Part shown: one piece after another, positions 7,737 through 37,562 of the stretch
Layout: the number at the start of each line of letters is the position of its first letter
Numbering within the stretch: position 1 is the first letter of the stretch
Assembly (NCBI RefSeq): GCF_902713615.1
Contig: NC_052158.1
Span: forward strand, 43,177,159 to 43,241,158
Direction of reading: 5' to 3'
DNA length: 64,000 nt
Source of the DNA: Scyliorhinus canicula
Taxonomy: Eukaryota
Notes under the pieces: model-generated
What the model was told of the DNA's origin: nothing
Databases searched by the model: none
Seen by the model: the letters and a program-made list of their open reading frames with translations, nothing else
Made by a program: the position numbers and the translations under genes

Positions 7737-7780
7737 CCTGGTACTCGTGTTCCTAGGACTTAAAGGAAAAGTTTAGAACA

Positions 7781-9800: not shown

Positions 9801-10684
9801 TTCTGCTAGTGACTGTTTGTGATCAGCGGGCACTAGGACCCTGCGGAGCCATGCAGTGTCAATTTCAACGCAGCAGTTTCGAAACTGCTCAGCACAAATT
9901 CTTTATCTGTTTATTCTGAGACCAATGTAGTTCTGAACATACTGAGTTACTCATAATACTGATTGTGTTGTTCCTCGTGTCTTAATAAAGCTCGCAGTCT
10001 CAAGTGTGGAGAAGATGCTTTATTGTGGGTTCGTTCAGTTTCCAGAGCTCGACCTAGAACTACCTTCCAGTGCTAACTACCAGCTTTGCTTGCTGTGTGT
10101 CCTGCTTACCAGCCCCCCTGCTGTGAAGAGTGTGTCCTCACTTCCTGTCCTGATCTATTTATATGGCTCTCCCGTGCTCCCTCTAGTGGTCGCTCAGTTG
10201 TGTTGCATCTGGTTAACTTGTGATCACCACATCCCCCTTTTTCTCTTAACATATTTTCTGAACATCGTTAAAGAAAATTGTACATCCTGTCCCAGTGTAT
10301 TTATAGCTCTCCCGCTCGTGTTTGCTCTGTTGTTTTTTTTTTTATCTGGTCAATCTACGATCACCACATCCCCCTTTTTCTCATTACATAGTTTCTGTAC
10401 ATCATTAAAGAAATTTTATACAAAACAGTAACTTATGATATGCGTATCTATACAAGTGATGATGCTATTGCCTTAGTTAACAAAGCCAATGTATTTATAT
10501 GTCCAATCTTAATAAAAACATTTATGAGTCCAAACTTGATGAATTTGTTCAGAGCTTTTTTTTTTTTCTTTTTGTTGTTGATGACGTGGTGATATTGATA
10601 TTGCAAGTCCGCTGTGAATGTTGTTGGTGTTCCTTGTTATCTTAAGTACCCAATGCGTCATCCCGAGGTGTCTGCATGGTCACA

Positions 10685-13600
10685 TCACTGATGTTGACTG
10701 GCATGGACTTTTTTTCTGTGCTTGTGGTGTTGATTTATTGTCTCATCCGCCTTGGATGCTGGTGTGCTTTGCCATTGTGTACAAGTCGTTGTTTCATTGC
10801 TGTTGTTTCTGTCGTTCCTGTTTTTGTTGTTTCCGTTGCCGTACTTGTCGCTGTTTTTGTCGTTTCCGTCTTTGTTGTTGTCGCTATTTCTGCTCCTGAC
10901 TTTGTTGTGTTTGTTGCCATTCTTGTTGTTTCTGTCTCTGTCGTTGTCGCTATCTTTGTTCCTGACTTTGTTGTGTTTGTTGCCATTCTTGTTGTTTCTG
11001 CCTCTGTCGTTGTCGCTATCTTTGTGCCTGACGTTGTTGTTTGTCTTGTTGCGCTTCATGTTGCTTTTATTCTTGCTGTTGTCGTTCTCGTTTCTGCTGT
11101 GCTTCTTGCTATTGTTGTTTGTCTTGTCGCGCTTCATGTTGCTTTTCTTCTTGCTGTTGTCGTTCTCGTTTCTGCTGTGCTTCTTGCTATTGTTGTTGGT
11201 CTTGTCGCGCTTCATGTTGTTTTTGTTCTTGCTGTGTTTCTTTTGACTTTTGTTTTTCTTGTTATACTCTGTGAGTGTCCCGAGTGGATAATTTGAGTCA
11301 TTGAGCATTCCGTCTCGCGAGTGGTGCGAATGATCTGATGTTGCATCGGTGCAGGTGACATCAATCAGTTGTGGAGAATTGGATTCCGCATCTTTGCTTT
11401 CTTGGTGCTCGTCTTCCGGAGTCAAAGTCTTCTCGATTACATTTGACGCGGTGTCTGTGGACTCTCGGCGCTCCTCTTCTGGAGTCCAAATCTGCATGAT
11501 TTCAGTTGACGTGGTTTCTCTAGACTCTTGGTGCTCCGCTTCTGGAGTTAAAATCTTCATGATTTCTGTTGATGTTATCTCACTGGACTCCAGGTGCTCC
11601 TCTTCTGGAGTCAAAATCTGCATGGTTTCTTTTTGTTTGATGTCTCTGGACTCCAGGTGCTCCTCTTCTGGAGTCAGAATCTGCATGGTTTCTTTCGGCA
11701 TTGTCTCTGTGGACTCCAGGTGCTCCTCTTCTGGAGTCAAAATCTGCATGTTTTCTTTTGGCGTTGTCTCTCTGGGCTCCAGGTGCTCCTCTTCTGGAGT
11801 CAAAATCTGCATGTTTTCTTTCGGCATCGTCTCTCTGGACTGTTGGGTGGCCCGACTCTGTGCTTCTGTACAGACAAGCTGAGAACTGTCAGTCTCACTG
11901 TGATCCTGTACGTCGAGTGCGAGCACCTTGTCACTGTCTTCGCATGCAGTGGGCAGAGGTGCATTGTCTTCTTCTTGTTCCTGTGAGCGTGTTGGACTTT
12001 CATAGTCTGCTCTTGCTTCTTGTTCCTGTGAGCGTGTTGGACTTTCATAGTCTGCTTTTGGTTGCTCAGGTACAGCGGGTTTACCTTCATGGTCTTGTTC
12101 ATGCTTGGTGTCCGCCCGGGAGTGTTTGCTTGCATCCCTGTTGGCGTCTTTCATCACTCGCACTGTGGAGCCTGTCATCGCTCGCTCCGTGGAGTCTTCC
12201 TGTGCTCTCTGTGTGGCGTCGTCTTCGTCTTGGGTATTGCTGTCATCCAATGTATCGACGAGCTGCCATGGCACCATGGTGTTGGATTCATCCACCATGA
12301 GTAGAGTCGTGTTGAGCTTTGCAACGGTGTCGCTGATGCTGTGATCAGCATGTCCAAATAACTCCTCCATGTCTGAGTAGTATTCTTTGAAACCCATTTC
12401 ATCTTCGTTGGCTTCTTCTACCACGAGTTGATTCGTGTTGAACTTTGCGACCGTGTCGCTGATGCTGTGATAAGCATATCCGACTGACTCAGCTGTGTCT
12501 GAGTAGTATTCTCCGAAAACCAAATCATCCTGGTTGGATTCTTCTACCACGAGTTGATTCGTGTTGAACTTTGCGACCGTGTCGCTGATGCTGTGATAAG
12601 CATATCCGACTGACCCAGTCAGGTCTGAGAGGTAATCGTCGAAAAACAAATCATCTTTTGTTGTTTCGGAATTCTTTTTGTTCGCTTCACTGTGTGTGGT
12701 GAAGGCAGCTTTTTCCAAGGTTTTGTGCAAGTTGTTTTTCACTGTTGGTTTAAGTTCAGGCGTTTTTCTGTGTTCTGAGGCAAGAAAATTTGGTTTTACC
12801 ACTTTAAGTGTCTTGTTTTCAATTTTCGGGCATTTCCCTTTTAAGTGGGCGTGGTCAGGATTCTCAGACGTCATGACGTCACGCGTAGGAACGACTTGCA
12901 CATGCGCAAATCGGCTTTCTTTCCTTGTGCGGTTCGGTGTCCATTGCGCATGCGCGGCTTGCGCATGCGCATGACGGTCCGCGACGAAGACTTTTTTTGA
13001 CTGCGCATGCGCGGCTTGCGCATGCGCATAACGATCGGCACCGCGATCTTTTGTAAACTGCGCATGCGCGACTTCCGGTTCCGGCGCACGCGCGACTTCC
13101 GGTTCCGGCGCATGCGCAACTTCCGGTTCCGGCGCATGCGCAGATGCGATTTGTAGTTCTTTGCTTACCAGAGACTGCAAAATGTGCTCCAACGCCATTT
13201 TATCGCGGATTTCAGCGTTTTTTTTTTCTAAAAGTTGTAAGTTACCTTTTCTTACCGATCTGGACTGGATTTCAGCGTTTTGGCTTTGTGAAAAATTCAT
13301 GTTATTTCTTCTTTTTGATCTGTACTGTGCATTCGCGATTTCCTGATCTTTTTGTGATTTTTTAAGTCTTGCATCACTCAGTCTCTGTGCAGGTTGGACT
13401 GTGAGCATGCCTTGCTGTTCAAATTTCTCACAGTACTCTTCAAATTTGTTTAGTAACGTTTGTAAGCTGTTCCTGTCTTCACCTTTTGAGTGTTTAAATC
13501 CATTATACACTTTCCTATTGACAGGCCCTTCGATGAGAATTGCTATTTTAATTTTGTCTGAGACTTCTGCAACATCATTAGCTATGAGATAAAAATCGAA

Positions 13601-13732
13601 CATTTGTTTAAACCTTTTCCAGACATTTCTTACATTACCAGTCGTGTCCAGCTGAGGTGGGTATCCATGCCACATCCTCGAATTAGCGATGTCTTCCCCA
13701 GTCAAATGTCCAGTAGGAGATTTCCATGCCAT
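10685..13732 (-). CDS. 1015-aa Gypsy Gag N-terminal domain fused to a tandem-repeat low-complexity tail
   Basis: PPQLDTTGNVRNVWKRFKQMFDFYLIAND...KIAIL...LLNKFEEYC resembles the Gypsy Gag N-terminus; good Kozak (AAAATGG) about 50 nt after the PBS; seven types of in-frame repeat follow. Confidence 0.85.
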   Translation of the reverse strand: MAWKSPTGHLTGEDIANSRMWHGYPPQLDTTGNVRNVWKRFKQMFDFYLIANDVAEVSDKIKIAILIEGPVNRKVYNGFKHSKGEDRNSLQTLLNKFEEYCEKFEQQGMLTVQPAQRLSDARLKKSQKDQEIANAQYRSKRRNNMNFSQSQNAEIQSRSVRKGNLQLLEKKNAEIRDKMALEHILQSLVSKELQIASAHAPEPEVAHAPEPEVARAPEPEVAHAQFTKDRGADRYAHAQAAHAQSKKVFVADRHAHAQAAHAQWTPNRTRKESRFAHVQVVPTRDVMTSENPDHAHLKGKCPKIENKTLKVVKPNFLASEHRKTPELKPTVKNNLHKTLEKAAFTTHSEANKKNSETTKDDLFFDDYLSDLTGSVGYAYHSISDTVAKFNTNQLVVEESNQDDLVFGEYYSDTAESVGYAYHSISDTVAKFNTNQLVVEEANEDEMGFKEYYSDMEELFGHADHSISDTVAKLNTTLLMVDESNTMVPWQLVDTLDDSNTQDEDDATQRAQEDSTERAMTGSTVRVMKDANRDASKHSRADTKHEQDHEGKPAVPEQPKADYESPTRSQEQEARADYESPTRSQEQEEDNAPLPTACEDSDKVLALDVQDHSETDSSQLVCTEAQSRATQQSRETMPKENMQILTPEEEHLEPRETTPKENMQILTPEEEHLESTETMPKETMQILTPEEEHLESRDIKQKETMQILTPEEEHLESSEITSTEIMKILTPEAEHQESRETTSTEIMQIWTPEEERRESTDTASNVIEKTLTPEDEHQESKDAESNSPQLIDVTCTDATSDHSHHSRDGMLNDSNYPLGTLTEYNKKNKSQKKHSKNKNNMKRDKTNNNSKKHSRNENDNSKKKSNMKRDKTNNNSKKHSRNENDNSKNKSNMKRNKTNNNVRHKDSDNDRGRNNKNGNKHNKVRNKDSDNDRDRNNKNGNKHNKVRSRNSDNNKDGNDKNSDKYGNGNNKNRNDRNNSNETTTCTQWQSTPASKADETINQHHKHRKKVHASQHQ
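12865..13145. promoter_or_regulatory. CpG-rich cluster of NRF1-, ETS/GABP- and CRE-like motifs inside the A1 ORF
   Basis: TGACGTCA at 12874-12881, about seven GCGCATGCGC cores, three ACTTCCGG in a 24-bp tandem. Same cluster in A2 near 36360-36640. Confidence 0.45.
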
Positions 13733-14067
13733 TTTGTGCTTTCTGTATCTGCAGCTGAGTTGTCCTGTCGTAAGCGTCCTGAAATCACTGCTGGTACCAT
13801 GTGTTGTTCCTCGTGTCTTAATAAAGCTCGCAGTCTCAAGTGTGGAGAAGATGCTTTATTGTGGGTTCGTTCAGTTTCCAGAGCTCGACCTAGAACTACC
13901 TTCCAGTGCTAACTACCAGCTTTGCTTGCTGTATGTCCTGCTTACCAGCCCCCCTGCTGTGAAGAGTGTGTCCTCACTTCCTGTCCTGATCTATTTATAT
14001 GGCTCTCCCGTGCTCCCTCTAGTGGTCGCTCAGTTGTGTTGCATCTGGTTAACTTGTGATCACCACA

Positions 14068-14445
14068 CTGATCACATTCCAGGGGCGGTGGCGGAGGTGG
14101 CTGTGGGGGCTGTGGAGGCTGTGGGGGCTGTGGGGGCTTTTGACGTCCCCCGCAATTGAACATGTTCCTCATCCTAATCGTCCCCCTCCCCCCCAACCTT
14201 GCTTCGCATTGCTGACCGGCGCCGGGGGGAGGAGTAGCATTCTTACATTTCTTATATTCTTTACATTCCCTTTTTAAGACCTCTACTGTTTTAACAATTC
14301 CCCCTTTGGTGAGGCCAATACCCAATTTTGAGGCATTTGCCTGCCAGCTAGCCAGTATAGATGCATCTTTCATTAACTGACAGTATTCCCTCCACAAGGC
14401 AATTAATTTCTTTGCGGTGGGTTCTTGATAATACAGAAAAATGTG
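14068..14445 (-). pseudogene. gag: ERV gag N-terminal fragment with proline-rich segment
   Basis: KKLIALWREYCQLMK...QKPPQPPQPPQPPQPPPPPP, interrupted by A1; a short remnant continues at ~9830-9963 before the deletion into pol. Confidence 0.65.
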
Positions 14446-15212
14446 TCATTTGAAACATGAAAGTCTGGCAATATCTGGTTTAAGAGGGTACAGGGAGAGA
14501 TCCCACAAAAGGTTAATAGCAGCTGCAAAGAGCAGGGTTATAAAATGCAGATTCCTGCGCACAAGCAGGCCTCAGCAGACACACAGGCTTCATGTGGTAA
14601 GCTAAAACAATGGCTCACACCTTCATGGAATGTAACTATCTCAGAAAGCATCTGAAAAGCATGGATGAGAGTTTCAATTGCATTAAGTGACGAATGTTTA
14701 AAACAGGCAAGTCTTTCAAGTCACAACCAAGTTAAATTTTAGCATACAGCTAAGAGCAAAGTTTCACACCTTAATTGAAATAAACTCTCTTAGTAAACAG
14801 CTGGAAAGAATGGAAGATGCTCAGTCGAATTTAGTGTCAATTTAAGGGGTAAAATTCTACGAACATCAAGTTAATTAAAAGAAAATTGGAGATGACCTGG
14901 CTACGAGAAACATCATTTAAGTCAAAATCAAAGGCAAAGTTATGAACTGGGGACAATTGGAAAATTAAACGATTTGAAATCACAGAAATAAAAGTTAACT
15001 ATTGAAACAAAAGCATTTTTTAAATCAAATCTGAGAGGAGACGATATGCCTGAAATGAATAACGAGTTGTAGTAAGATGTTTACATCAAAGATACTTTTA
15101 AACTATCAAAGTGAAACAAGCCCATATACAATACAGTCGTTAAAACTTAATAACTCTTCGAAAGAGAATATAAACCCAGGGAGCAGAAGCAGCAGCACTC
15201 TGTCACAGCAAC

Positions 15213-15258
<46 letters not shown>

Positions 15259-19828: not shown

Positions 19829-21414
19829 CCTCCGGCCTCGTTGCGCTCTGACTTGAGTGAAATGAAGCCAGTGAATAGTGGGAGAGGCCAAAACCGAGAA
19901 CTGTGCCAGGCGCCAGACAGCTTGCGATGCAGCCGGCCCATTCGTAGGCGAAATCGAGATCTTGCCATAGCGTGGTGAGAAACCAATTATCACCACTTAA
20001 GCCCTATTTCCATACAATTAACAGGAGAGGCCCCATATCCAACAGCCTCCCGTGATTCAGGCTGTCATACTGGCGCCGATTAGAATTCCTTTTTAAAAAC
20101 ATAAATCTGGTGGAAGAGCTTCTGTGGGGAGCCGAGGGGGTGAGTAGCCATATTTACTCACAGGCAAAGATCCCGGGGATGCTGGGCTTGCCACCCCAAT
20201 GCTCAGTGGAGGTGGGCTGCCATGGGAGGGTGAGGGAGTGGCACTGGGGTAGAACAACCGGGGGAGGCAACCGCACGCAGCACCACCATGCCAACCCCTG
20301 GATCATGTGCACCTTGTCCCTCCCTGTCTGTCCCACCAACTACCCATAACCCTCACTGCCTGCCAAGGCCTCTGGGCATGTGGCTGAAGGCAATTGCGAA
20401 TAGGTAATTGGCAATGGTGATTAAGTGAGCACTTGACACAACCTAAGTGGATTCCCATGGGTGGGCGGGCCATGTAGCATGTGGGAGTCATTACCTAGTA
20501 TCCCAATCACACCTTGATGCATGGACACTGTGCTTGAAAACTGGGAGGCAACACCACACATGTAGCAGCCAACATCCGAATACCCAGGGACGGGACACAG
20601 CTCCGGGGACATGTCCATGGCTGAATGGTGGGTGAGTACCACGGGGAAGGGGAGATGCATGGAGAGATGGGCCAAGGGTTTGGAGGTCAGCCGCATTGCA
20701 GAAGAAAGTGACAGAGGCGTTATACTGGTGCACAAGGGTGTTTATTTTGTTTTACAATTTCCCACACTCCCGATGGTGCCTCCCCCCCCCCCCCCCACAC
20801 TCTTTTATTACACTCCTGTATCATCTTTTATGACACTTCTTTGTATGTTTAGATACACTACAGAGTGTAATATGTGTTACTCAAACCTTGGTTGCTTATG
20901 AGGTTTCTGAACCTTGATGAAGAAGACTCAAACTTGTCCAGCAGTAATAAAAGGTTTATTGAGTAACTCTGACAATAATTGTGTGAGTTCTTTACTTTAA
21001 CATTGATACCAGTGATAAGGTTAACTAGATCTAAATACAGTAACTATGCTTAACTACACTAACCATCTGAGCTAATCTTATACTCCTGTCCTGGTCACAG
21101 TCGACCCGAAGAGAGAGAGGCACAATGCGGTTGCATTTATACTGTTGGTCTGGCCCTCTTGTGATCATCTGGTGCTACTGATTACACATTAACTCCTTAT
21201 GTACATGCGCATAGAGATGACTACATTCCCCCCTTTTTTGTTACATATTTTCTGTATGTTGCAAAGAAAATTGAACAAACATAATGGATGTAGTTTGCAA
21301 ATGCATTACATAAAATCAATGAGTTAATCTGTCAAATGTTAATACATTCAGTCTCTTAGGTTTTTTTCCCTCCGTTTGCTTGTGGTTCAGTCCCAACAAA
21401 TCATCATGAGGTGT

Positions 21415-23767
21415 TCAAATGGTTGAATCACTTTGTTGTCTGATTTTGACTTTTTTTTCTATGGTATTGTGGTAGCAATTCTGTGTTACATCTTTGTTGT
21501 CTGACCTGGACTTTTTCCTGTGCTTGCGGTATTGATTCTGTATGTCATCTGCCTTGAAAGCTGGTTTGCTTGTTTGTTGTGGGGCAGATTTGAGTTTGCG
21601 AGATTTGTTGTCATGCCATGTTATGTTTGTACTCTTGCCATTGTTTTGGACTTTGCTGCTACATTGTCCTTCATGTGCAGAGTTGTACCATTTTGTACCG
21701 GTTGTTGCTGTTGTTTTTGTTTCTGTCATTGTCTTTGTTGTTGTTTTTGTTGTGCTTGTTGTTGTTGTTTTTGTTGTGCTTCATGTTGTAGTTTTTGTTG
21801 TTCTTGTAGTGCTCAATGACTGTTCCTTGTGGATAATTTGAGTCATTCTGAAAGTTATTGGTATCCGTGTCCTTTGTGGTACCTGATGTTTCATTGAGCT
21901 TTTTGAACTGAGGTTTGTGAGAACGATCTGATGTTGCATTGATCTTGGTGACATCAGTCATTTCTGGTTGATTTTATTCCTCTTTGCTTCCTTGGTGCTC
22001 CTCTTCTGGAGTCATTTCTGGTTGATCTGCTTCATCTGTGATCTCTTGACGCTCCTCTTCTGGAGTCATTTCAGGTTCATTTGAATCATCTTTGGTTTCT
22101 TGGTGTTCATCTTCTGGAGTCAAAATCTTCACGATTTCATGTTCTTGTGGGTAGTTGAGAGTAGATGAGGTTTTAATTGACGTGGTCTCACTGGACTCAA
22201 GAGTAGTTTTACTTTGATTGTTGAGTGCTTCTGCACATACGAGCTGAGATCTGTCAGTCTCGCTGTGATCTTGCACACGTTGTATGTCGATTGTGATAAC
22301 TGTGTTACTGTTCTCATATACAGTTGGTAGACATTCATTGTCTTGCTATTGATTACATGAGCTGGGTAGACTTTCATAGACTACTGGTTGCTCAAATAAG
22401 GTGGATAGGCCTTCATAGTCGTCTTCATGCATGGTTGGCTCTCTGGAGTCTTTAATTACTTCCATTGTGGAGTCTGTCAATTATCTCTTGGAGGAGGCTT
22501 CCACCGCTCTCTCTGTGGAGTCGTGCAGTGTTCTCTGTGTGGAGACAATCAGCACTCTCAGTGGAGTCGGTCAGTACTCTCTGCGGCGTTGTTTTTTCTT
22601 GGCTATTCGACAGGTTTCTGTCATCCAATGTTTCAACGATCTGTCATTGCATCATGGTATGAGTAGAGTCATATTGACCTTTTCAACTGTGTTGCTGATG
22701 CTATGATCATCATATCCGAATAACTCCGCCATGTCTGAGTAGTATTCTTCCATATACAAAACATCTTTTTTTGTTTCGGATTTATTGTTGTGCTCTTCAT
22801 GTTCAATGAACAAATCATCTTCTTTGGTTTTGGATTTGTCATTGTGCTCTTCACTTTGGATGCTGCAAACTGCTTGTTCCAGGGTGCTGTGCAGATTATT
22901 TTCAACTGCTGGTTGAAGTTCAGGCATTGTTCTGTCTTTCGAGGTAAAACAAATTGGAAATTGTAGCTTTAAAACTCTTATTTTTAATTTTCGGGCAGTG
23001 TTGCTTTAAGTGGGAGTGGTCTGAGTCTTCTGACGCCATGACGCTCGTGACGTAAAGCGTAGAATTGCGCATACACAAATTGATTTTCCTTTACTGTGCG
23101 CTCTTTTTGAAACTGCGCATGCGCGGCTTATTGCGCATGCGCGGAACTGTATTTTGCCATTTTACTTCTTTTAGGGAAGTGCGCATGTGCGGACTGGTCA
23201 GACTGCACACACGCAAGATGGCTGCCACTCAGAACATCCATCTTCATAAGTTTCAACCCTGCCTCTGCCTCGTGGTGAGTGTTCGCGCCATTTTTACAGA
23301 TTTTGTTTTCTAGGTAATGATTCTTTGTTTGTAAAGACTCAAAGTATTGAAAAAAAAAGTTTTTGTTCATATGCAAGGCATTTTTGTATCGCGATTTCTA
23401 ATGTTAAATCCTTTTCTTTTAAAAGTGCTTGCCTTAAACGTTCATCAGCTCTTCCATAAATTATTTGGTCCATTATCATTAAGTTTCTTAAAGCAGCAGA
23501 ATTGCAGGTATTACAGTGATCTTCAAATTTTTCGAGTACAACTTTCAATTTAGTTTAGTCTTCATCTTCCAAGTAATTAAAGGAGTTATATTTTTCTCTA
23601 GCTTCATGTCCTGCTATTTCTAGCAGCAGTGCTATTTTCTCTTCTTCAGAGATCGTGTTCAAATCATTAGCTACCATATATAATTGGAATATTTGTTGAA
23701 AAATTCTCCAGTTATCACGTAAGTTATCGGTTGTTTTCAGCTGCCGTGGAGGTCGCACATGTTCCAT
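21415..23767 (-). pseudogene. Frameshifted Gag-repeat-tail ORF of element B
   Basis: PPRQLKTTDNLRDNWRIFQQIFQLY...KIALLL, KFEDHC, DQIIYG..DERLRQALLKEKDLTLE. Tail motifs shared with A: EYYSDMAELFG..HSISNTV, QDHSETD.SQLVC.EA, ILTPEDEHQE, NDSNYP.GT. Confidence 0.85.
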
Positions 23768-23828
23768 CGAATCGGTCGGTCATCGAGGATCCATATGCTG
23801 CAAAGTCTTCCACAATCAAACCGACAGT

Positions 23829-24496
23829 ACTTAATTTTCTTTCTTTTTGTCTAACCTAATCTAACTAGTTCTTTCAAAGCCAACTGTCCTGGTACCATCT
23901 TTTATTACACTCCTGTATCATCTTTTAGTACACTTTGTATGTTTTGATATACCACGGAATGTAATATGTGTTACTCAAACCTTGGTTGCTGATGAGGTTT
24001 TCTGAATCTCAAACTTGTCCAGTAGTAACAAAAGGTTTATTGAGTAACTATAACAATAATTGCGTGAGTTCTTTACTTTAACATTGATACTAGTGATAAG
24101 GTTAACCAGATCTTAACCAGATGTTATGAACCAGACTTTTTTAAAGATCTTAAAGTAAGGGAACTTAATTTTCTTTCTTTTTGTCTAACCTAATCTAACT
24201 AGTTCTTTCAAAGCCAACTGTCCTGGTACCATCTTTTATTACACTCCTGTATCATCTTTTAGTACACTTTGTATGTTTTGATATACCACGGAATGTAATA
24301 TGTGTTACTCAAACCTTGGTTGCTGATGAGGTTTTCTGAATCTCAAACTTGTCCAGTAGTAACAAAAGGTTTATTGAGTAACTATAACAATAATTGCGTG
24401 AGTTCTTTACTTTAACATTGATACTAGTGATAAGGTTAACCAGATCTTAACCAGATGTAATGAACCAGACTTTATTAAAGATCTTAAAGTAAGGGA
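23829..24496. repeat. 334-bp tandem duplication spanning the PBS, part of the LTR and the CR1 5' junction
   Basis: Units 23829-24162 and 24163-24496, nearly identical. Confidence 0.92.
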
Positions 24497-26795
24497 ACAC
24501 TTAGGAAGCAGCGATCATAATATGGTTGAGTTCAGTCTGCAGTTTGAAAGAGAGAAGGCAAAATTGGATGTAATGGTGTTACAGTTAAATAAAGGTAATT
24601 ACGAGGGCATGAGAGAGGAACTGGTGAAAATCAACTGGAAGCAGACCCTAGCAGGGAAGACAGTAGAGCAAAAATGGCAGGAGTTTGTATGCATAATTGA
24701 GGACACTGTACAGAGGTTCATCCCCAAGAAAAGAAAGATTATCCAGGGAGGGATTAGACAGCCATGGCTGACAAAGGAGGTCAGGAAATGTATCAAAGAA
24801 AAAGAGAGATCCTATAAAGTGGCCAAAAGCACCGGGAAATCAGAAGATTGGGAAGGCTACAAAAACAAACAGAGGTTAACAAAGAGACAAATAAGGAAGG
24901 AGAGGATCAAATATGAAGGCAGGCTAGCCAGTAATATAAGAAATGATAGTAAAAGTTTCTTTCAATACATAAGAAACAAACGTCAGGCCAAAGTAGACAT
25001 TGGGCCAATTCAAACTGATTCTGGAAGGCTAGTGATGGGAGATGAGGAAATGGCTGGAGAACTTAATAAGTACTTTGCGTCTGTCTTCACAGTGGAAGAC
25101 GTTAGTAATATCCCAAAAATTATAAAGGGTCAGGGGGCTGAGTTGAGTATGGTTGCCATTACAAAAGAGATGGTGCTAAAAAAGCTAAAAGGTCTTAAAA
25201 TTGACAAATCTCCTGGCCCCGATGGGCTACATCCTAGAGTTCTGAGGGAGGTGGCTGAAGAAATAGCGGAAGCGTTGGTTGAGATCTTTCAAAAATCACT
25301 GGAGTCAGGGAAAGTCCCGGACGATTGGAAGATCGCTGTTGTAACCCCCTTGTTCAAGAAAGGATCAAGACAAAAGATGGAAAATTATAGGCCAATTAGC
25401 CTAACCTCGGTTGTTGGTAAAATTCTAGAATCGATCGTTAAGGATGAGATTTCTAATTTCTTGGAAGAGCAGGGTCGGATTAGAACAAGTCAACATGGAT
25501 TTAGTAAGGGGAGGTCGTGCCTGACGAACCTGTTAGAATTCTTTGAGGAGGTGACAAGTAGGTTAGACCAGGGAAACCCAGTGGATGTGGTCTATCTGGA
25601 TTTCCAAAAGGCCTTTGATAAGGTGCCACACAGGAGGCTGCTGAGTAAGGTGAGGGCCCATGGTGTTCGAGGTGAGCTACTGGCATGGGTTGAGGATTGG
25701 CTGTCTGACAGAAGGCAGAGAGTTGGGATAAAAGGTTCTTTTTCGGAATGGCAGCCGGTGACCAGCGGTGTCCCACAGGGTTCAGTGTTGGGGCCGCAGC
25801 TGTTCACCATATATATTAATGATCTGGATGAAGGGACTGGGGGCATTCTAGCGAAGTTTGCTGATGATACGAAGTTAGGTGGTCAGGCAGGTAGTGCTGA
25901 GGAAGTGGGGAGGCTGCAGAAGGATCTAGACAGTTTGGGAGAGTGGTGCAGGAAATGGCTGATGCATTTCAACGTGAGAAAATGTGAGGTCTTGCACTTT
26001 GGAAAAAAGAATCCAAGCATAGACTACTTTCTAAACGGTGAGAAAATTCATAATGCCAAAGTACAAAGGGATCTGGGAGTGCTAGTCAAGGATTCCCTAA
26101 AGGTAAACATGCAGGTTGAATCCGTGATTAAGAAAGCGAATGCTATGTTGTCATTTATCTCAAGAGGGTTGGAATATAAAAGCAGCGATGTGCTACTGAG
26201 CCTTTATAAGGCTCTGGTTAGGCCCCATTTGGAGTACTGTGTCCAGTTTTGGGCCCCACATCTCAGGAAGGACATACTGGCACTGGAGCGTGTCCAGCGG
26301 AGATTCACACGGATGATCCCTGGAATGGCGGGTCTAGCATATGAGGAACGGCTGGCGTTCCTGGGATTGTATTCATTGGAGTTCAGAAGGTTAAGGGGAG
26401 ATCTAATAGAAACTTACAAGATTATACATGGCTTAGAAAGGATGGACGCAAAGAAACTGTTTCCGTTAGGCGAGGAGTCGAGGACCCGTGGGCACAGCCT
26501 TAGAATTAGAGGGGGTAAATTCAAAACAGAAATGCGGAGACATTTCTTCAGCCAGAGAGTGGTGGGCCTGTGGAATTCATTGCCGCAGAGTGCAGTGGAG
26601 GCCGGGACGCTAAATGGCTTCAAGGCAGAGATAGATAAATTCTTGATGTCGCGAGGAATTAAGGGCTATGGGGAGAATGCTGGGAGGTGGAGTTGAAATG
26701 CCCATCAGCCATGATTGAATGGCGGAGTGGACTCGATGGGCCGAATGGCCTTACTTCCACTCCTATGTCTTATGGTCTTATGGTCTTATGGTCTT
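24448..26795 (+). mobile_element. Young 5'-truncated CR1 LINE inserted in the LTR of element B
   Basis: (TATGGTCT)n 3' tail at ~26765-26795; ATCT on both sides; uninterrupted ORF2. Confidence 0.95.
24522..26696 (+). CDS. CR1 ORF2 reverse transcriptase (N-terminally truncated)
   Basis: 724 aa with KSPGPDG, YRPISLTS, QHGF, DFQKAFDKV, GVPQGSVLGP, FADD. Confidence 0.93.
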   Translation: MVEFSLQFEREKAKLDVMVLQLNKGNYEGMREELVKINWKQTLAGKTVEQKWQEFVCIIEDTVQRFIPKKRKIIQGGIRQPWLTKEVRKCIKEKERSYKVAKSTGKSEDWEGYKNKQRLTKRQIRKERIKYEGRLASNIRNDSKSFFQYIRNKRQAKVDIGPIQTDSGRLVMGDEEMAGELNKYFASVFTVEDVSNIPKIIKGQGAELSMVAITKEMVLKKLKGLKIDKSPGPDGLHPRVLREVAEEIAEALVEIFQKSLESGKVPDDWKIAVVTPLFKKGSRQKMENYRPISLTSVVGKILESIVKDEISNFLEEQGRIRTSQHGFSKGRSCLTNLLEFFEEVTSRLDQGNPVDVVYLDFQKAFDKVPHRRLLSKVRAHGVRGELLAWVEDWLSDRRQRVGIKGSFSEWQPVTSGVPQGSVLGPQLFTIYINDLDEGTGGILAKFADDTKLGGQAGSAEEVGRLQKDLDSLGEWCRKWLMHFNVRKCEVLHFGKKNPSIDYFLNGEKIHNAKVQRDLGVLVKDSLKVNMQVESVIKKANAMLSFISRGLEYKSSDVLLSLYKALVRPHLEYCVQFWAPHLRKDILALERVQRRFTRMIPGMAGLAYEERLAFLGLYSLEFRRLRGDLIETYKIIHGLERMDAKKLFPLGEESRTRGHSLRIRGGKFKTEMRRHFFSQRVVGLWNSLPQSAVEAGTLNGFKAEIDKFLMSRGIKGYGENAGRWS

Positions 26796-31080: not shown

Positions 31081-32912
31081 AACTAGGGTCCATGCTGTAA
31101 ACATTTATGCCTCTGTGATTATTATATTCATCAGCCGCCTGATGTTCACAGTGAGCTGCCTACCCTTGACAAAGCCCGTCTGGTCCTCTGCGACCACCTC
31201 TACTACAGCTCTCCAGCCTTTTGGCCAAGACCTTTGCGAGTGTTTTCGCGTCTACATTTAGCAGCGAAATGGGTCTATATGATCCTCACTCTGCCGGGTC
31301 TGTTGTACCTTGTAAACCACAATATGTATTAACCCGTATGCGATGGACAAAATACCACAAGTTGCTTGGTACAATAATACTTTATTTCACACACCGAAAG
31401 TTAATGTCAATCAATCACACACACATACATGCTGAACTCTAAGCTAACACACTAGAAAGACCTTAACTTAACTTCCAGGTGACTGGCAAATACAGAACAG
31501 ATATGGCCTTATCTGGAATCCTGTTGTCTGGTAGTGCGGGATGTCTGTTGCTGGTCGTTTGTGTCCTTGGTTCTGGTCCCTCTGTGGATGACGTTGACGT
31601 GGGTGGTCCTCTTCTTGGCTGGTGAAGGTATCACCATTGTTGTCATCGGTGATCGAGAGAGCAAGTGGTGGGCTGCTCAGTGCCTTTTATCCCTTGGGAG
31701 TTGCATGTGCTTTTGGGCGGTCCCAGGTAAATGTCCAATCGATTGAACAGGGCTTGATCACCCTGATCAATCCCAACCAATTGAGGGTGGCCACCTCGAT
31801 AGCTGGGCGGGTCCCAGTCGGCCATGGTCGTTAGTGTCCGAGGCACGTAGACCTTTCCAAATAAGGAAAACAGACGCCACCAAGTCTTCCACATATTGTT
31901 AGTTTCTACCAGGAGCCCATTGTCCCAGGATGGCCTTTTCCCTGTGTCAGTTTCTGCAAGGTCTGGGCTGCAGCTTTTGTATGTTTGCAAGCTGCAGCCT
32001 GTCTGTGTTCTGTCTTTGACCAAATTTCCCATCGATCTTTGCGGGCGCCCATTTTAGATGGCCACATATCCATCTTCTTGATCCTTAATGTAAAGTGTGG
32101 TGGATCAGAGACTCGGACCAATACCTGCCCTGCATCCCCAGTCACCTGTCAGTCAAGTAAGGCCCTCACTCTAACATACAAGTATATTCTGCATAATACA
32201 TGAACAAAGATAACTAAACATTACATAAAAGACTTAATACAATTACTAATGTAATACAAATTTGAAAATATCCTTACTCTCATACAAAAATCAAGGAATG
32301 TTCTAACGCTAGTATTAAATTACAAAATATCGAACATAACGAAATAGTCATGATACAAGTAGATAAACAAGAGAGCCTTAATAACTTACAAAAGTCAAAT
32401 ACAAGTAAACTCAGGTACTTAGTGCAAACAAGTTTGATTCCATGGTAATCTCTTTAGTTTGGCTGAATTAAAGGAGTCCGTGTTGTAAACATGGGTCCCA
32501 TGTCCTGGCGCTTAGTGATTTTCGCTTTCCACCTTCGGAATTGAACTGTGAGGACGATGAGGTAGATTAAGGTAAACAGGATCAGGACGACAGCCAGATG
32601 TGAGAGAAGGCACACAATGGGGTGAATCTGAATGTTAGAGCCCCAATCCCAGAAATCATCCCACCAAGTGGTGGCCTTATTTTCTGCGATCTGCCGGGTG
32701 ACATCCTGGGTCTGTTGGATACTTTGGTAAACGTTTTGTGTGCTGTGGCCAATTTTTGCCTAATTTGGAGCAGCTCCTCAGGTAGGAGTCTAAGTTCAGT
32801 ATCATATTCTTTGTAATAATCCCCCAGGTTTTGCTGGAGTTTGTCAGTGGCATTGATGTCCACCCTTTTCCTTCTGGATGTCAATTAAATGTGTGAGGTC
32901 CACTCTGGCTGG

Positions 32913-35900
32913 TGTGTTGTTCCTCGTGTCTTAATAAAGCTCGCAGTCTCAAGTGTGGAGAAGATGCTTTATTGTGGGTTCGTTCAGTTTCCAGAGCTCG
33001 ACCTAGAACTACCTTCCAGTGCTAACTACCAGCTTTGCTTGCTGTGTGTCCTGCTTACCAGCCCGCCTGCTGTGAAGAGTGTGTCCTCACTTCCTGTCCT
33101 GATCTATTTATCTGGCTCTCCCGTGCTCCCTCTAGTGGTCGCTCAGTTGTGTTGCATCTGGTTAACTTGTGATCACCACATCCCCCTTTTTCTCTTAACA
33201 TATTTTCTGAACATCGTTAAAGAAAATTGTACATCCTGTCCCAGTGTATTTATAGCTCTCCCGCTCGTGTTTGCTCTGTTGTTTTTGTATCTGGTCAATC
33301 TACGATCACCACATCCCCCTCTTTCTCATTACATAGTTTCTGTACATCATTAAGGAAAATTATACAAAACAGTAACTTATGATATGCGTATCTATACAAG
33401 TGATGATGCTATTGCCTTGGTTAACAAAGCCAATGTATTTATATGTCCAAACTTAATAAACACATTTATGAGTCCAAACTTGATGAATTTGTTCAGAGCT
33501 TTTTTTTTTTTTTCTTTTTGTTGTTGATGACGTGGTGATATTGATATTGCAAGTCCGCTGTGAATATTGTTGGTGTTCCTTGTTATCTTAAGTACCCAAT
33601 GCGTCATCCCGAGGTGTTTGCATGGTCACATCACTGATGTTGACTGGCATGGACTTTTTTTTGTGCTTGTGGTGTTGATTTATTGTCTCATCCGCCTTGG
33701 ATGCTGGTGTGCTTGCTTGTTCTGGAGCAGACGTGAGTTTGTGCGATTCGTTGTCATCCCATGACATGTTTGTAGTCTTGTTATCATTTTGCAGTGTGCT
33801 GTGGCATCGTCCATCATGTGCCAAGTAGTGCCATTGTGTACAAGTCGTTGTTTCATTGCTGTTGTTTCTGTCGTTCCTGTTTTTGTTGTTTCCGTTGCCG
33901 TACTTGTCGCTGTTTTTGTCGTTTCCGTCTTTGTTGTTGTCGCTATCTTTGCTCCTGACTTTGTTGTGTTTGTTGCCATTCTTGTTGTTTCTGCCTCTGT
34001 CGTTGTCGCTATCTTTGTGCCTGACGTTGTTGTTTGTCTTGTTGCGCTTCATGTTGCTTTTATTCTTGCTGTTGTCGTTCTCGTTTCTGCTGTGCTTCTT
34101 GCTATTGTTGTTGGTCTTGTCGCGCTTCATGTTGTTTTTGTTCTTGCTGTGTTTCTTTTGACTTTTGTTTTTCTTGTTATACTCTATGAGTGTCCCGAGT
34201 GGATAATTTGAGTCATTGAGCATTCCGTCTCGCGAGTGGTGCGAATGATCTGATGTTGCATCGGTGCAGGTGACATCAATCAGTTGTGGAGAATTGGATT
34301 CCGCATCTTTGCTTTCTTGGTGCTCGTCTTCCGGAGTCAAAGTCTTCTTGATCACATTTGACGCGGTGTCTGTGGACTCTCGGCGCTCCTCTTCTGGAGT
34401 CCAAATCTGCATGATTTCAGTTAACGTGGTTTCTCTAGACTCTTGGTGCTCCGCTTCTGGAGTTAAAATCTTCATGATTTCTGTTGATGTTATCTCACTG
34501 GACTCCAGGTGCTCCTCTTCTGGAGTCAAAATCTGCATGGTTTCTTTTTGTTTGATGTCTCTGGACTCCAGGTGCTCCTCTTCTGGAGTCAGAATCTGCA
34601 TGGTTTCTTTCGGCATTGTCTCTGTGGACTCCAGGTGCTCCTCTTCTGGAGTCAAAATCTGCATGTTTTCTTTTGGCGTTGTCTCTCTGGACTGTTGGGT
34701 GGCCCGACTCTGTGCTTCTGTACAGACAAGCTGAGAACTGTCAGTCTCACTGTGATCCTGTACGTCGAGTGCGAGCACCTTGTCACTGTTTTCGCTCTGT
34801 GCTTCGGTACAGACAAGCTGAGAACTGTCAGTCTCACTGTGATCCTGTACGTCGAGTGCGAGCACCTTGTCACTGTTTTCGCTCTGTGCTTCGGTACAGA
34901 CAAGCTGAGAACTGTCAGTCTCACTGTGATCCTGTACGTTGAGTGTGATCACCTTGTCACTGTCTTCGCATGCAGTGGGCAGAGGTGCATTGTCTTCTTC
35001 TTGTTCCTGTGAGCGTGTTGGACTTTCATAGTCCGCTCTTTCTTCTTGTTCCTGTGAGCGTGTTGGACTTTCATAGTCTGCTTTTTCTTCTTGTTCCTGT
35101 GAGCGTGTTGGACTTTCATAGTCCGCTCTTTCTTCTTGTTCCTGTGAGCTTGGTAGACTTTCATAGTCTGCTTGCGGTTGCTCAGGTACAGCGGGTTTAT
35201 CTTCATGGTCTTGTTCATGCTTGGTGTCCGCCCGGGAGTGTTTGCTTGCATCCCTGTTGGCGTCTTTCATCACTCGCACTGTGGAGCCTGTCATCGCTCG
35301 CTCCGTGGAGTCTTCCTGTGCTCTCTGTGTGGCGTCGTCTTCGTCTTGGGTATTGCTGTCATCCAATGTATCGACGAGCTGCCATGGCACCATGGTGTTG
35401 GATTCATCCACCATGAGTAGAGTCGTGTTGAGCTTTGCAACGGTGTCGCTGATGCTGTGATCAGCATGTCCAAATAACTCCTCCATGTCTGAGTAGTATT
35501 CTTTGAAACCCATTTCACCTTCGTTGGCTTCTTCTACCACGAGTTGATTCGTGTTGAACTTTGCGACCGTGTCGCTGATGCTGTGATAAGCATATCCGAC
35601 TGACTCAGCCATGTCTGAGTAGTATTCTCCGAAAACCAAATCATCCTGGTTGGATTCTTCTACCACGAGTTGATTCGTGTTGAACTTTGCGACCGTGTCG
35701 CTGATGCTGTGATAAGCATATCCGACTGTCTCAGCCATGTCTGAGAGGTAATCTTCGAAAAACAAATCATCTTGGTTGGATTCATCTACCACGAGTTGAT
35801 TCGTGTTGAACTTTGCGACCGTGTCGCTGATGCTGTGATAAGCATATCCGACTGACTCAGCCATGTCTGAGTAGTATTCTTTGAAAACCAAATCATCTTG

Positions 35901-37562
35901 GTTGGATTCATCTACCACGAGTTGGTTCGTGTTGTGCTTTGCGACCGTGGCGCTGATGCTGTGATAAGCATATCCGACTGACTCAGCTATGTCTGAGTAG
36001 TATTCTTCGAAAACCAAAGCATTTTGGTTGGATTCATCTACCACGAGTTGGTTCGTGTTGTACTTTGCGACCGTGTCGCTGATGCTGTGATAAGCATGTC
36101 CGACTGACCCAGTCAGGTCTGAGAGGTAATCGTCGAAAAACAAATCATCTTTTGTTGTTTCGGAATTCTTTTTGTTCGCTTCACTGTGTGTGGTGAAGGC
36201 AGCTTTTTCCAAGGTTTTGTGCAAGTTGTTTTTCACTGTTGGTTTAAGTTCAGGCGTTTTTTTTGTGTTCTGAGGCAAGAAAATTTGGTTTTACCACTTT
36301 AAGTGTCTTGTTTTCAATTTTCGGGCATTTCCCTTTTAAGTGGGCGTGGTCAGGATTCTCAGACGTCATGACGTCACGCGTAGGAACGACTTGCACATGC
36401 GCAAATCGGCTTTCTTTCCTTGTGCGGTTCGGTGTCCATTGCGCATGCGCGGCTTGCGCATGCGCATGACGGTCCGCGACGAAGACTTTTTTTGACTGCG
36501 CATGCGCGGCTTGCGCATGCGCATAACGATCGGCGCCGCGATCTTTTGTAAACTGCGCATGCGCGACTTCCGGTTCCGGCGCACGCGCGACTTCCGGTTC
36601 CGGCGCATGCGCAACTTCCGGTTCCGGCGCATGCGCAGACGCAATTTGTAGTTCTTTGCTTACCAGAGACTGCAAAATGTGCTCCAACGCCATTTTATCG
36701 CGGATTTCAGCGTTTTTTCTTTCTAAAAGTTGTAAGTTACCTTTTCTTACCGATCTGGACTGGATTTCAGCGTTTTGGCTTTGTGAAAAATTCATGTTAT
36801 TTCTTCTTTTTGATCTGTACTGTGCATTCGCGATTTCCTGATCTTTTTGTGATTTTTTAAGTCTTGCATCACTCAGTCTCTGTGCAGGTTGGACTGTGAG
36901 CATGCCTTGCTGTTCAAATTTCTCACAGTACTCTTCAAATTTGTTTAGTAACGTTTGTAAGCTGTTCCTGTCTTCACCTTTTGAGTGTTTAAGTCCATTA
37001 TACACTTTCCTATTGACAGGCCCTTCGATGAGAATTGCTATTTTAATTTTGTCTGAGACTTCTGCAACATCATTAGCTATGAGATAAAAATCGAACATTT
37101 GTTTAAACCTTTTCCAGACATTTCTTACATTACCAGTCGTGTCCAGCTGAGGTGGGTATCCATGCCACATCCTCGAATTAGCGATGTCTTCCCCAGTCAA
37201 ATGTCCAGTAGGAGATTTCCATGCCATTTTGTGCTTTCTGTATCTGCAGCTGAGTTGTCCTGTCGTAAGCGTCCTGAAATCACTGCTGGTACCATGTGTT
37301 GTTCCTCGTGTCTTAATAAAGCTCGCAGTCTCAAGTGTGGAGAAGATGCTTTATTGTGGGTTCGTTCAGTTTCCAGAGCTCGACCTAGAAATACCTTCCA
37401 GTGCTAACTACCAGCTTTGCTTGCTGTGTGTCCTGCTTACCAGCCCGCCTGCTGTGAAGAGTGTGTCCTCACTTCCTGTCCTGATCTATTTATCTGGCTC
37501 TCCCGTGCTCCCTCTAGTGGTCGCTCAGTTGTGTTGCATCTGGTTAACTTGTGATCACCACA
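32913..37562 (-). mobile_element. Non-autonomous Gag-only LTR element, copy A2 (4650 bp)
   Basis: 268-bp LTRs 32913-33180 and 37295-37562 (1 mismatch); TSD GCTGG (32908-32912, 37563-37567); same PBS and PPT as A1. Confidence 0.95.
33588..37227 (-). CDS. ~1212-aa Gag-repeat-tail protein of A2, split by a +1 nt change in an A8 run near 36257-36264
   Basis: ORFs 36250-37227 (325 aa) and 33588-36278 (896 aa) join into the A1 homologue if one base is removed from the homopolymer. Confidence 0.75.

What the first reader, a model, noticed from the sequence alone, without database searches (positions are those of the whole stretch)
9964..14067. Pol-less LTR element family encoding a ~1000-1200 aa Gag-N-terminal/repeat-tail protein
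Seen: complete cis-elements (268-bp LTRs with 1 mismatch, Leu-like PBS, PPT, 5-bp TSD) and one ORF filling the interior. Only ~80-100 N-terminal residues resemble Gypsy Gag; there is no zinc knuckle, protease, RT, RNase H or integrase. About 900 aa of low-complexity sequence follow, with an acidic block then an Asn/Lys/Arg block. A second young copy (32913-37562) has its own TSD, so the family was recently mobile. Known: Gag-only non-autonomous elements exist (plant TR-GAG, mammalian MaLR), and Gag-derived proteins can co-assemble with or block capsids (Fv1, Arc). I know of none with such a tail. Inference: a parasite of an autonomous Gypsy whose protein docks on the helper capsid, while the charged disordered tail binds RNA or forms condensates, aiding its own packaging or restricting the helper.
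Basis: partly seen in the sequence, partly recalled or inferred. Interest (0 to 1): 0.9.

Follow-up and report, generated by a model that had tools for sequence, protein, structure and literature searches.

The report
Gag-only shark retrotransposon with repeat tail
A recently mobile jumping gene in a shark-type genome has lost all its enzymes. It keeps one long gene: a fragment of a virus-like coat protein fused to about 700 residues of in-frame repeats, and selection has preserved the reading frame but hardly the individual residues.

Summary
Window 9964-14067 (minus strand) is a complete LTR retrotransposon. It has 268-bp LTRs differing at one base, TG...CA ends, a 5-bp target duplication, a primer-binding site and a polypurine tract. 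Its single ORF has 1015 codons where about 50 stops are expected from composition.

Residues 25-104 match the N-terminus of Ty3/Gypsy Gag-Pol proteins (327 hits). About half of the capsid N-terminal domain is deleted. A double zinc knuckle survives only as a relic lacking six of eight ligands. There is no protease, RT, RNase H or integrase. The tail is about 465 acidic, then about 165 basic Asn/Lys-rich residues, built from tandem repeats.

A second young copy has its own TSD but a frameshift. An old, decayed copy of a diverged subfamily (20801-24498) and a catshark gene model share the same colinear layout.

All 12 repeat arrays and all 7 large indels are multiples of three, so the frame is under selection. 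Residue-level constraint on the tail is not detectable, but its charge pattern is conserved.

Best reading: a Gag-retaining, non-autonomous Gypsy derivative (compare plant TR-GAG) that needs an unidentified helper. This is a new variant of a known kind and moderately interesting.

The parts
14068..14072 (.). Copy A target-site duplication, upstream copy (ATCAG read on the minus strand)
13800..14067 (-). Copy A 5' LTR, 268 bp, TGTGG...ACACA, with a TATA-like CATATAAATAG and an AATAAA
   Evidence: one mismatch to the 3' LTR
13782..13799 (-). Copy A primer-binding site, TGGTACCAGCAGTGATTT
   Evidence: TGGTACCAG occurs in the window only at copies A, B and C
10685..13732 (-). Copy A single ORF, 1015 aa (116 kDa, pI 6.0)
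13403..13660 (-). aa 25-110: region homologous to the N-terminus of Ty3/Gypsy Gag (first half of the capsid N-terminal domain); four predicted helices
13136..13402 (-). aa 111-199: basic segment predicted as one long helix; its start aligns with a relic of the Gag 'RERLL..DLTL..A' motif seen in copy C
12767..12877 (-). aa 286-322: relic of the double CCHC zinc knuckle, keeping HLKGKCP but lacking six of eight zinc ligands
   Evidence: weak scores, but the same register against about 10 Gag homologues; no zf-CCHC hit
11267..12661 (-). aa 358-822: acidic block (net -76) made of in-frame arrays with 126-, 45- and 63-nt units plus unique acidic stretches
10778..11266 (-). aa 823-985: basic Asn/Lys/Arg/Ser block (net +30, 50 Asn) made of 78- and 66-nt arrays
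10232..10246 (-). Copy A polypurine tract, AGAGAAAAAGGGGGA
9964..10231 (-). Copy A 3' LTR
9959..9963 (.). Copy A target-site duplication, downstream copy
32908..37567 (-). Copy B with its TSD (CCAGC). LTRs are 32913-33180 and 37295-37562, with one mismatch. ORF pieces are 36250-37227 (325 aa) and 33588-36278 (896 aa), split by a 1-bp change near 36264. It has more 126-, 45- and 87-nt units than A and fewer 63-, 78- and 66-nt units.
20801..24498 (-). Copy C: an old, decayed member of a diverged subfamily with the same colinear protein layout. The 3' LTR is 20801-21225, the PPT 21226-21239 and the PBS starts at 23897. The 5' LTR is partial and is followed by a 334-bp tandem duplication. There are about 6 in-frame stops and at least 2 frameshifts.

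Best explanation
Shown. This is a family of non-autonomous LTR retrotransposons derived from a Ty3/Gypsy element, in an elasmobranch-type genome. It kept the LTRs, PBS, PPT and a remodelled gag, and lost protease, RT, RNase H and integrase. It can therefore move only with enzymes supplied by another element, which is not in this window.

The single ORF encodes three parts. First, a conserved N-terminal piece of the Gag capsid domain. Second, degenerate relics of the rest of Gag, including a ligand-less double zinc knuckle. Third, in the place where pol used to be, about 700 residues of tandem repeats arranged as a long acidic stretch followed by a basic Asn/Lys-rich stretch. Selection has kept the frame open through repeated expansions and contractions of these repeats.

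Inferred. Defective copies could in principle be rescued in trans, so persistent frame maintenance implies a benefit in cis: RNAs that are translated to the end are the ones that get copied. I think the protein most likely acts on or near its own RNA. The Gag N-terminal fragment would give the link to helper Gag particles. The basic tail would substitute for the lost zinc-knuckle nucleocapsid as a non-specific RNA binder. The acidic stretch would act as an overgrown spacer whose charge, not its sequence, matters. Copy-number changes in the repeats probably arise by template switching during reverse transcription.
For: Structure of a mobile LTR element with TSDs in two young copies.

Gag homology. 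Residues 25-104 hit 327 proteins at E<=1e-3, best 1e-11. The hits include polyproteins with PR-RT-RNaseH-IN order. All nearly invariant residues of that Gag N-terminus are kept except one conservative Leu-to-Ile change at position 67. No pol domains are present.

Frame selection.
- 0 stops in 1015 codons against about 50 expected.
- All tandem arrays inside the ORFs of A, B and C have periods divisible by 3 (24, 57, 60, 126, 45, 87, 63, 78, 66; in C 54, 12, 24). Arrays elsewhere in the window have periods 2, 74, 334 and 18.
- All 7 large A/B indels in the ORF are multiples of 3, while the 3 indels outside it are 2, 1 and 4 nt.
- Between A and B the ORF diverged 0.60%, against 1.43% for the LTRs plus UTRs (P=0.016).

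Age of the design. Copy C shares every block in the same order and the same ~45-residue capsid deletion, at about 28% DNA divergence in alignable parts and 31-36% aa identity. Its ~6 stops fit about 4% post-insertion decay, so it was probably open when it inserted. A Scyliorhinus torazame gene model (P0154) contains about 350 open residues of the same tail.

Charge pattern. The acidic-then-basic layout is conserved in A, B, C and P0154 despite independent repeat units of 63 versus 54 nt.

Structure prediction. The N-terminus is confidently helical (pLDDT 85), and the tail shows no predicted fold.
Against: Residue-level purifying selection on the tail is not demonstrated. A vs C gives omega 0.64 and B vs C 0.73, against 0.77-0.79 expected under stop-free neutrality (P=0.09 and 0.41). 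The 126-nt units give omega of about 1.05-1.3. A vs B gives omega 0.52, from only 17 differences (P=0.23).

Neither young copy encodes the full inferred ancestral protein. B is frameshifted. A lacks 38 residues of the C-terminal block shared by B, C and P0154, and its last ~9 residues are changed by a 1-bp indel.

The capsid piece is only half a domain, and no significant structural match to a capsid was found.

There is no helper, no transcript, no peptide and no genome-wide copy census. Only three copies and one gene model were available.
Confidence: 0.55

Rival explanations
1. The frame is kept for an RNA-level reason only. Ribosomes must read to near the 3' end so that the genomic RNA is not treated as carrying a premature stop with a long 3' UTR (nonsense-mediated decay), or so that it stays ribosome-covered. 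On this view the protein beyond the N-terminus has no function of its own.
For: The tail evolves at a rate indistinguishable from stop-free neutrality. Repeat copy number changes very fast: 7 large indels against 17 substitutions between A and B. Copy A has lost part of the only well-conserved C-terminal block. That retroelement RNAs are exposed to decay after early termination is established knowledge recalled from memory (for example the Rous sarcoma virus stability element); I did not check it here.
Against: It does not explain why the tail arose and grew instead of being deleted. It does not explain why the acidic-then-basic charge layout is the same in four lineages with independently expanded units. 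It does not explain why the Gag N-terminus keeps the family's invariant residues.
Confidence: 0.25
2. One reading: the protein is a parasite's weapon. It docks on the helper's capsid lattice through the Gag fragment, and through its charged disordered tail it forms condensates or blocks helper assembly, acting as a dominant-negative or restriction-like factor.
For: The Gag N-terminal homology is real. The tail is a long polyampholyte with no predicted fold. Gag-derived inhibitors such as Fv1 are known; this is from memory.
Against: Half of the capsid N-terminal domain and almost all of the C-terminal domain, which make the lattice contacts in known capsids, are deleted or degenerate. No significant capsid fold match was found. 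An element that harms its helper harms itself. Nothing here bears on condensates.
Confidence: 0.1
3. The tail is captured or domesticated host coding sequence, and the ORF reflects a host gene rather than an element gene.
For: The only database relative of the tail is an annotated 'uncharacterized protein' of Scyliorhinus torazame.
Against: That 583-aa model spans 53 kb inside another gene. It joins an RT fragment, the tail and an integrase end, so it is a chimera of repeats. In the window the tail always sits between LTRs with TSDs and occurs in three copies. No other homologue exists among 5.8 billion proteins.
Confidence: 0.03
4. The long ORF is a by-product of T-poor composition and repeat expansion, without any selection.
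For: The sense strand is only 15% T, and about 40% of the ORF is made of tandem arrays.
Against: With that same composition about 50 stops are expected, the two other sense frames carry 34 and 58, and shuffles never exceeded 193 open codons. The unique, non-repeat parts (about 580 codons) are open too. Array periods are 12 of 12 divisible by three.
Confidence: 0.02

Closest known systems
TR-GAG elements of plants (Chaparro et al. 2015, PMC4350172)
   Same: Non-autonomous LTR retrotransposons with LTRs, PBS and PPT and a single ORF derived from gag, without pol; presumed to be mobilised in trans by an autonomous partner.
   Different: TR-GAGs are under 4 kb. The detailed example (TR-GAG1) encodes a recognisable full GAG with a Pfam domain and an intact zinc finger, of Copia type, in plants. 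Here gag is half deleted, the knuckles are ligand-less, two thirds of the ORF is an in-frame repeat tail, the ancestry is Ty3/Gypsy, and the host is a cartilaginous fish.
BARE-2 of barley and LARD/TRIM derivatives (from memory, not checked here)
   Same: Deletion derivatives of LTR retrotransposons that parasitise an autonomous relative; LARDs have long internal regions without pol.
   Different: LARD and TRIM interiors are non-coding, and BARE-2 is described as defective in its own Gag. Here an ORF is maintained.
Ty3 Gag3 architecture: capsid, acidic spacer, basic nucleocapsid (from memory, not checked here)
   Same: The order of a capsid piece, then an acidic stretch, then a basic stretch at the C-terminus resembles an enormously expanded spacer-nucleocapsid arrangement.
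   Different: In this family the zinc-knuckle relic lies before the acidic block, not after it. The tail therefore sits where the NC-protease linker and pol were, and homology of the tail to any Gag part was not found.
Mammalian non-autonomous LTR elements (MaLR, ETn/MusD, VL30; from memory)
   Same: Vertebrate LTR elements that lack pol and rely on helpers.
   Different: These derive from endogenous retroviruses, and ETn and VL30 interiors are non-coding. None is known to me to carry a repeat-built ORF of this kind.
Domesticated Gag genes (Arc, PEG10, PNMA/MOAP1, Fv1)
   Same: Proteins built on Ty3/Gypsy or ERV Gag. The best, non-significant, fold match was MOAP1 CA-like domain.
   Different: Those are single-copy host genes without LTRs. 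This one is flanked by LTRs and TSDs and is multicopy.

Membership tests
LTR retrotransposon (structural definition) | Two direct long terminal repeats with TG...CA ends | tested here: met
   268-bp LTRs, 267/268 identical, TGTGG...ACACA
LTR retrotransposon (structural definition) | Target-site duplication of 4-6 bp | tested here: met
   ATCAG for copy A and CCAGC for copy B
LTR retrotransposon (structural definition) | PBS next to the 5' LTR and PPT next to the 3' LTR | tested here: met
   TGGTACCAG... and AGAGAAAAAGGGGGA. The tRNA identity (Leu) rests on memory only.
Ty3/Gypsy (Metaviridae) lineage | Gag homologous to Gag of elements with PR-RT-RNaseH-IN order | tested here: met
   aa 25-104 hit 327 proteins. 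The long ones carry RVT_1, RT_RNaseH_2, Integrase_H2C2 and rve in Gypsy order.
Ty3/Gypsy (Metaviridae) lineage | RT/IN phylogeny placing it in a Gypsy clade | not testable with these tools
   The element has no pol.
TR-GAG | Single ORF, no pol, complete cis-elements | tested here: met
TR-GAG | ORF encodes a recognisable complete GAG (Pfam gag domain, intact zinc finger) | tested here: not met
   No Pfam gag or zf-CCHC hit. About 45 conserved capsid residues are deleted. The knuckles lack 6 of 8 ligands.
TR-GAG | Short element (<4 kb) | tested here: not met
   4104 bp (A) and 4650 bp (B)
LARD | Long internal region without coding capacity | tested here: not met
   1015-codon ORF with a maintained frame
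Domesticated Gag host gene | Single-copy, LTR-less, syntenic locus under purifying selection | tested here: not met
   Three copies in 64 kb, each with LTRs, two with TSDs. Synteny could not be examined.
Autonomous helper / non-autonomous pair | An autonomous element sharing LTR termini, PBS and PPT | tested here: inconclusive
   None in the window. The PBS word occurs only in A, B and C. The neighbouring ERV and the Gypsy remnant at 38234-41216 are unrelated. The rest of the genome was not available.

The most novel reading that the evidence does not exclude
A lineage of helper-dependent retrotransposons has, over a long time, evolved its own protein: half a capsid domain driving a giant, fast-evolving acidic-then-basic disordered region built by in-frame minisatellite growth. 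Selection would act on frame and charge pattern, and the protein would act in cis on its RNA to capture the helper's particles. That would be a retroelement counterpart of a satellite virus's own packaging protein, and a natural case of a transposon evolving a condensate-type or polyampholyte RNA-handling module de novo.
Probability: 0.2. Interest if true: 0.7.

Novelty: new variant of a known kind. Interest (0 to 1): 0.5.

Why it matters
Non-autonomous LTR elements that keep a gag gene are documented mainly in plants. I found no description of one in cartilaginous fishes, or of one whose ORF is mostly in-frame minisatellites (literature searches; no repeat catalogue could be consulted).

The family offers a clean natural experiment on what selection can 'see' in a parasite of a parasite. 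The reading frame and the charge layout are preserved, while residues drift and repeat numbers change faster than substitutions accumulate. If the protein proves functional, it would show how a defective element can build a new RNA-handling or assembly module from scratch. If only the frame matters, it would be a clear case of RNA surveillance shaping transposon sequence.

It also matters practically. Such ORFs end up in chimeric gene models, as in the catshark protein P0154.

Tried and rejected
1. My first A-versus-B dN/dS of 1.00 was an artefact. BLAST blocks had paired paralogous repeat units. An orthology-respecting global alignment gave 17 differences and omega 0.52.

2. The nominal omega of 0.64-0.73 between A/B and C looked like purifying selection. 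A stop-free neutral simulation with the observed mutation spectrum gives 0.77-0.79, so the result is not significant. Protein-guided alignments are biased and were not used for the conclusion.

3. Searches for family members found none apart from P0154:
- Word-indexed search with aa 1-340: none.
- Exact look-ups of the window's proteins: none.
- The metagenome scans, by protein and by the LTR-PBS junction: none.
- The DNA around P0154 could not be fetched.

4. A Gag profile against PDB sequences gave only chance hits. Foldseek of the N-terminal model against PDB and against viral models gave nothing significant.

5. The tail, the C-terminal block and aa 105-357 gave no significant match against the collected Gag-Pol proteins.

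6. I first read 'CTQWHYLAHDGRC' near the C-terminus of copy B as the second zinc knuckle. The alignments place both knuckle relics side by side at aa ~288-320, so I dropped that idea.

7. 'YPLGTL' (aa ~815) resembles a YPxnL late-domain motif, but it reads YPQGTV in C and HPHGTL in P0154, so I do not claim it.

8. Rfam found nothing in the window.

9. The ERV in which copy A is nested is not a candidate helper: it has an MLV-type integrase and a different PBS.


Full report
**Observation**

The element at 9964-14067 lies on the minus strand.
- Its LTRs (13800-14067 and 9964-10231) are 268 bp and differ at one position. They start TGTGG and end ACACA, and carry a TATA-like motif and an AATAAA.
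- The five bases ATCAG flank both ends.
- TGGTACCAGCAGTGA follows the 5' LTR directly, and AGAGAAAAAGGGGGA precedes the 3' LTR directly. Calling the PBS 'Leu-like' rests on my memory of the tRNA-Leu(UAA) 3' end.
- One ORF (10685-13732, 1015 aa) fills the interior.
- The sense strand is only 15% T, so long ORFs are somewhat favoured. Even so, about 50 stops are expected from composition, the two other sense frames hold 34 and 58 stops, and 500 shuffles never gave more than 193 open codons.
- Pfam finds no domain at all.

The second copy (32913-37562) has LTRs with one mismatch and its own TSD, CCAGC. Its ORF is split into 325 + 896 aa by a 1-bp change in an A-run near 36264.

**Genomic setting**

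- The closest named relatives of a CR1-like LINE in the window come from Mobula and Chiloscyllium.
- The only relative of the tail comes from Scyliorhinus torazame. An elasmobranch origin is therefore likely.
- Copy A is nested inside a young ERV-like provirus whose LTR pieces are 99-100% identical. This independently argues that A inserted recently.

**What the protein is made of**

A full scan of 1.84 billion representative proteins with aa 1-200 gave 327 hits at E<=1e-3, all to aa 25-104. The best hit had E=1e-11 and 45% identity.
- The long hits are polyproteins with protease, RT, RNase H, H2C2 zinc finger and integrase core in Ty3/Gypsy order.
- The named hits are arthropod 'K02A2.6-like' proteins.

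An alignment with 29 of these Gag N-termini shows how far the similarity runs.
- The query follows the family consensus up to 'KFEEYC' and then departs.
- The strongly conserved next ~45 residues (consensus P.KN...ER.KF..R.Q...E...FVT.L..L...CEF) are missing.
- Sub-threshold Pfam matches of two homologues (Retrotrans_gag, Ty3_capsid) place the retained part in roughly the first half of the capsid N-terminal domain.

Structure prediction with 88 aligned sequences gives confident helices at 34-51, 59-66, 70-77 and 90-106, and a long helix at 114-199 (pLDDT 85). Fold searches gave no significant match. The top PDB hit was the MOAP1 capsid-like domain at E=0.77.

Further along, aa ~288-320 align in one consistent register with the double CCHC knuckle of about ten homologues (HLKGKCP...K...N..AS). 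Six of the eight zinc ligands are replaced. Each score is weak (E=0.08 at best, in a database of 153 sequences), so this is a moderately supported relic, not a domain.

The Gag-derived part is therefore about 320 residues, not 100, and it is heavily eroded.

**The tail**

- Residues 358-822 are strongly acidic (net -76). They are built of 42-, 15- and 21-residue units plus unique stretches.
- Residues 823-985 are basic and Asn-rich (net +30, 50 Asn), built of 26- and 22-residue units.
- A single-sequence structure prediction shows no fold beyond residue 200 (pLDDT 37). This is weak evidence for disorder.
- The tail has no relative among 5.8 billion proteins except P0154, a 583-aa model from S. 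torazame. That model spans 53 kb inside another gene and joins an RT fragment, about 350 residues of tail and an integrase end. It is a chimera of repeats, not a host gene.

**A third copy shows the design is old**

BLAST of copy A against the window found a diverged relative at 20801-24498. It has:
- a different 425-bp LTR;
- the same PBS start (TGGTACCAGGA) and a similar PPT;
- every protein block in the same order as in A and B, at 31-36% amino-acid identity: the Gag N-terminus, the knuckle-relic block, one 42-residue unit, the acidic blocks, 'ILTPE[DE]EH'-type units (18 instead of 21 residues), the Asn/Lys block and a C-terminal block.

It shares the ~45-residue capsid deletion, so that deletion is ancestral to the family.

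Its LTRs differ by 7-9%. Its ~6 in-frame stops are about what 4% neutral decay would produce, so it was probably open when it inserted.

P0154 is 56-60% identical to C and 45% to B, which makes it a further lineage.

**Selection on the frame**

- Every tandem array inside the ORFs of A, B and C has a period divisible by three: 24, 57, 60, 126, 45, 87, 63, 78, 66 in A and B, and 54, 12 and 24 in C.
- The four arrays elsewhere in the window have periods 2, 74, 334 and 18.
- A global alignment of A and B finds seven large indels in the ORF (378, 90, 174, 63, 78, 66 and 114 nt), all multiples of three. It also finds two 1-bp changes.
- The three indels outside the ORF are 2, 1 and 4 nt.
- The ORF diverged 0.60% between A and B, against 1.43% for LTRs plus UTRs (P=0.016).

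The frame has therefore been under selection throughout the family's history.

**Selection on residues**

My first estimate (omega 1.0) was wrong because paralogous units had been paired.
- With orthologous pairing there are only 17 differences between A and B (5.5 synonymous, 11.5 not). This gives omega 0.52, which is not significant.
- Against copy C, DNA-guided alignments give omega 0.64 (A) and 0.73 (B).
- A neutral simulation that only forbids stops and uses the observed mutation spectrum gives 0.77-0.79. The observed values are therefore not significantly low (P=0.09 and 0.41).
- Within arrays, the 126-nt units give omega of about 1.05-1.3, and the 63-nt units about 0.5-0.6.

Residue-level constraint on the tail is thus at most weak.

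Two things are conserved.
- The Gag N-terminus still carries the nearly invariant residues of a family spread across animal phyla, apart from one conservative Leu-to-Ile change at position 67.
- The acidic-then-basic charge profile is the same in A, B, C and P0154, although their repeat units expanded independently.

**Mechanism**

Shown: the element is a pol-less Gypsy derivative that must use foreign enzymes, and its ORF frame is maintained.

Inferred: defective copies could be complemented in trans. Maintenance of the frame in the lineages that actually transposed (all three copies fit being open at insertion) therefore points to a benefit in cis.

My preferred reading (confidence about 0.55) has these parts:
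- The translated protein works on or near its own RNA.
- The Gag N-terminal fragment is the link to helper Gag.
- The basic tail replaces the lost zinc-knuckle nucleocapsid as a non-specific RNA binder.
- The acidic stretch is a composition-constrained spacer.

The main rival (about 0.25) is that only translation to the end matters, for example to avoid decay triggered by early termination. It fits the near-neutral residues. It does not explain why the tail exists or why its charge layout is conserved.

Chance and host-gene capture are excluded for practical purposes.

**Comparison and verdict**

In function the family resembles plant TR-GAG elements (PMC4350172) and other gag-bearing non-autonomous elements. 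It fails two of their defining features: a complete GAG with a zinc finger, and length under 4 kb. It is of Gypsy ancestry in a cartilaginous fish. It is not a LARD, because its interior codes, and it is not a domesticated Gag gene.

Literature searches found no description of such a family. Repbase and Dfam could not be consulted.

I rate it a new variant of a known kind, of moderate interest. The conclusions rest on three copies and one gene model.

Noticed in passing
window 5753-17003 (minus strand), interrupted by copy A: Young class-I ERV-like provirus hosting copy A. Long LTR pieces 5753-6052/16704-17003 (99%) and 6155-6454/16046-16345 (100%) have different spacings, which implies an extra ~1 kb in one LTR. 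It has an MLV-type integrase ORF at 7781-8833 (rve + MLVIN_C), a gag-like ORF just upstream of A, and a PBS different from the family's.
   Followed up: partly
window 17287-17607 (+): ORF with a strong immunoglobulin C1-set domain (PF07654, E=4e-22). Its sequence looks like a membrane-proximal domain exon of an MHC class II-type chain, so the window may lie in or near an MHC region.
   Followed up: partly
window 23829-24498: At the 5' end of copy C, a 334-bp unit comprising part of the LTR, the PBS and the leader is tandemly duplicated at 99% identity. It is far younger than the 7-9% divergence between C's LTRs.
   Followed up: no
window 10335-10416 and 33285-33366: Copies A and B both carry, inside the 3' UTR about 135 bp upstream of the real junction, a second diverged copy (82-83%) of the PPT plus the first ~35 bases of the LTR. 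It may be a relic of a rearrangement or a second plus-strand priming site.
   Followed up: no
window 38234-41216 (+): Another internally deleted Gypsy-like element with 212-bp LTRs (98% identical). It has Gag, protease and integrase ORFs but no RT. Its Gag is only 19% identical to the family's over 54 residues.
   Followed up: partly
window 24522-26696 (+), 46590-47981 (-), 53117-54646 (-): CR1-like LINE reverse-transcriptase ORFs. The first is 84% identical to an unnamed ENA protein and 64-65% to proteins of Mobula birostris and Chiloscyllium punctatum. The 46-60 kb stretch has a strong negative GC skew.
   Followed up: partly
whole window: Apart from four arrays (periods 2, 74, 334, 18), every minisatellite found by TRF in the 64 kb lies inside the three copies of this family. 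Repeat copy number differs between A and B at six arrays although they differ by only 0.6% in substitutions.
   Followed up: yes
window 4663-4750 (+): A tRNA-Ile-like sequence (anticodon AAT) called by ARAGORN. It could be a tRNA gene or a tRNA-derived SINE head.
   Followed up: no
protein P0154 (Scyliorhinus torazame, GCA_047496885.1): The annotated 583-aa 'uncharacterized protein' is a chimeric model spanning 53 kb within a RhoGEF-type gene. It joins an RT fragment, about 350 residues of this family's tail and an integrase end.
   Followed up: partly
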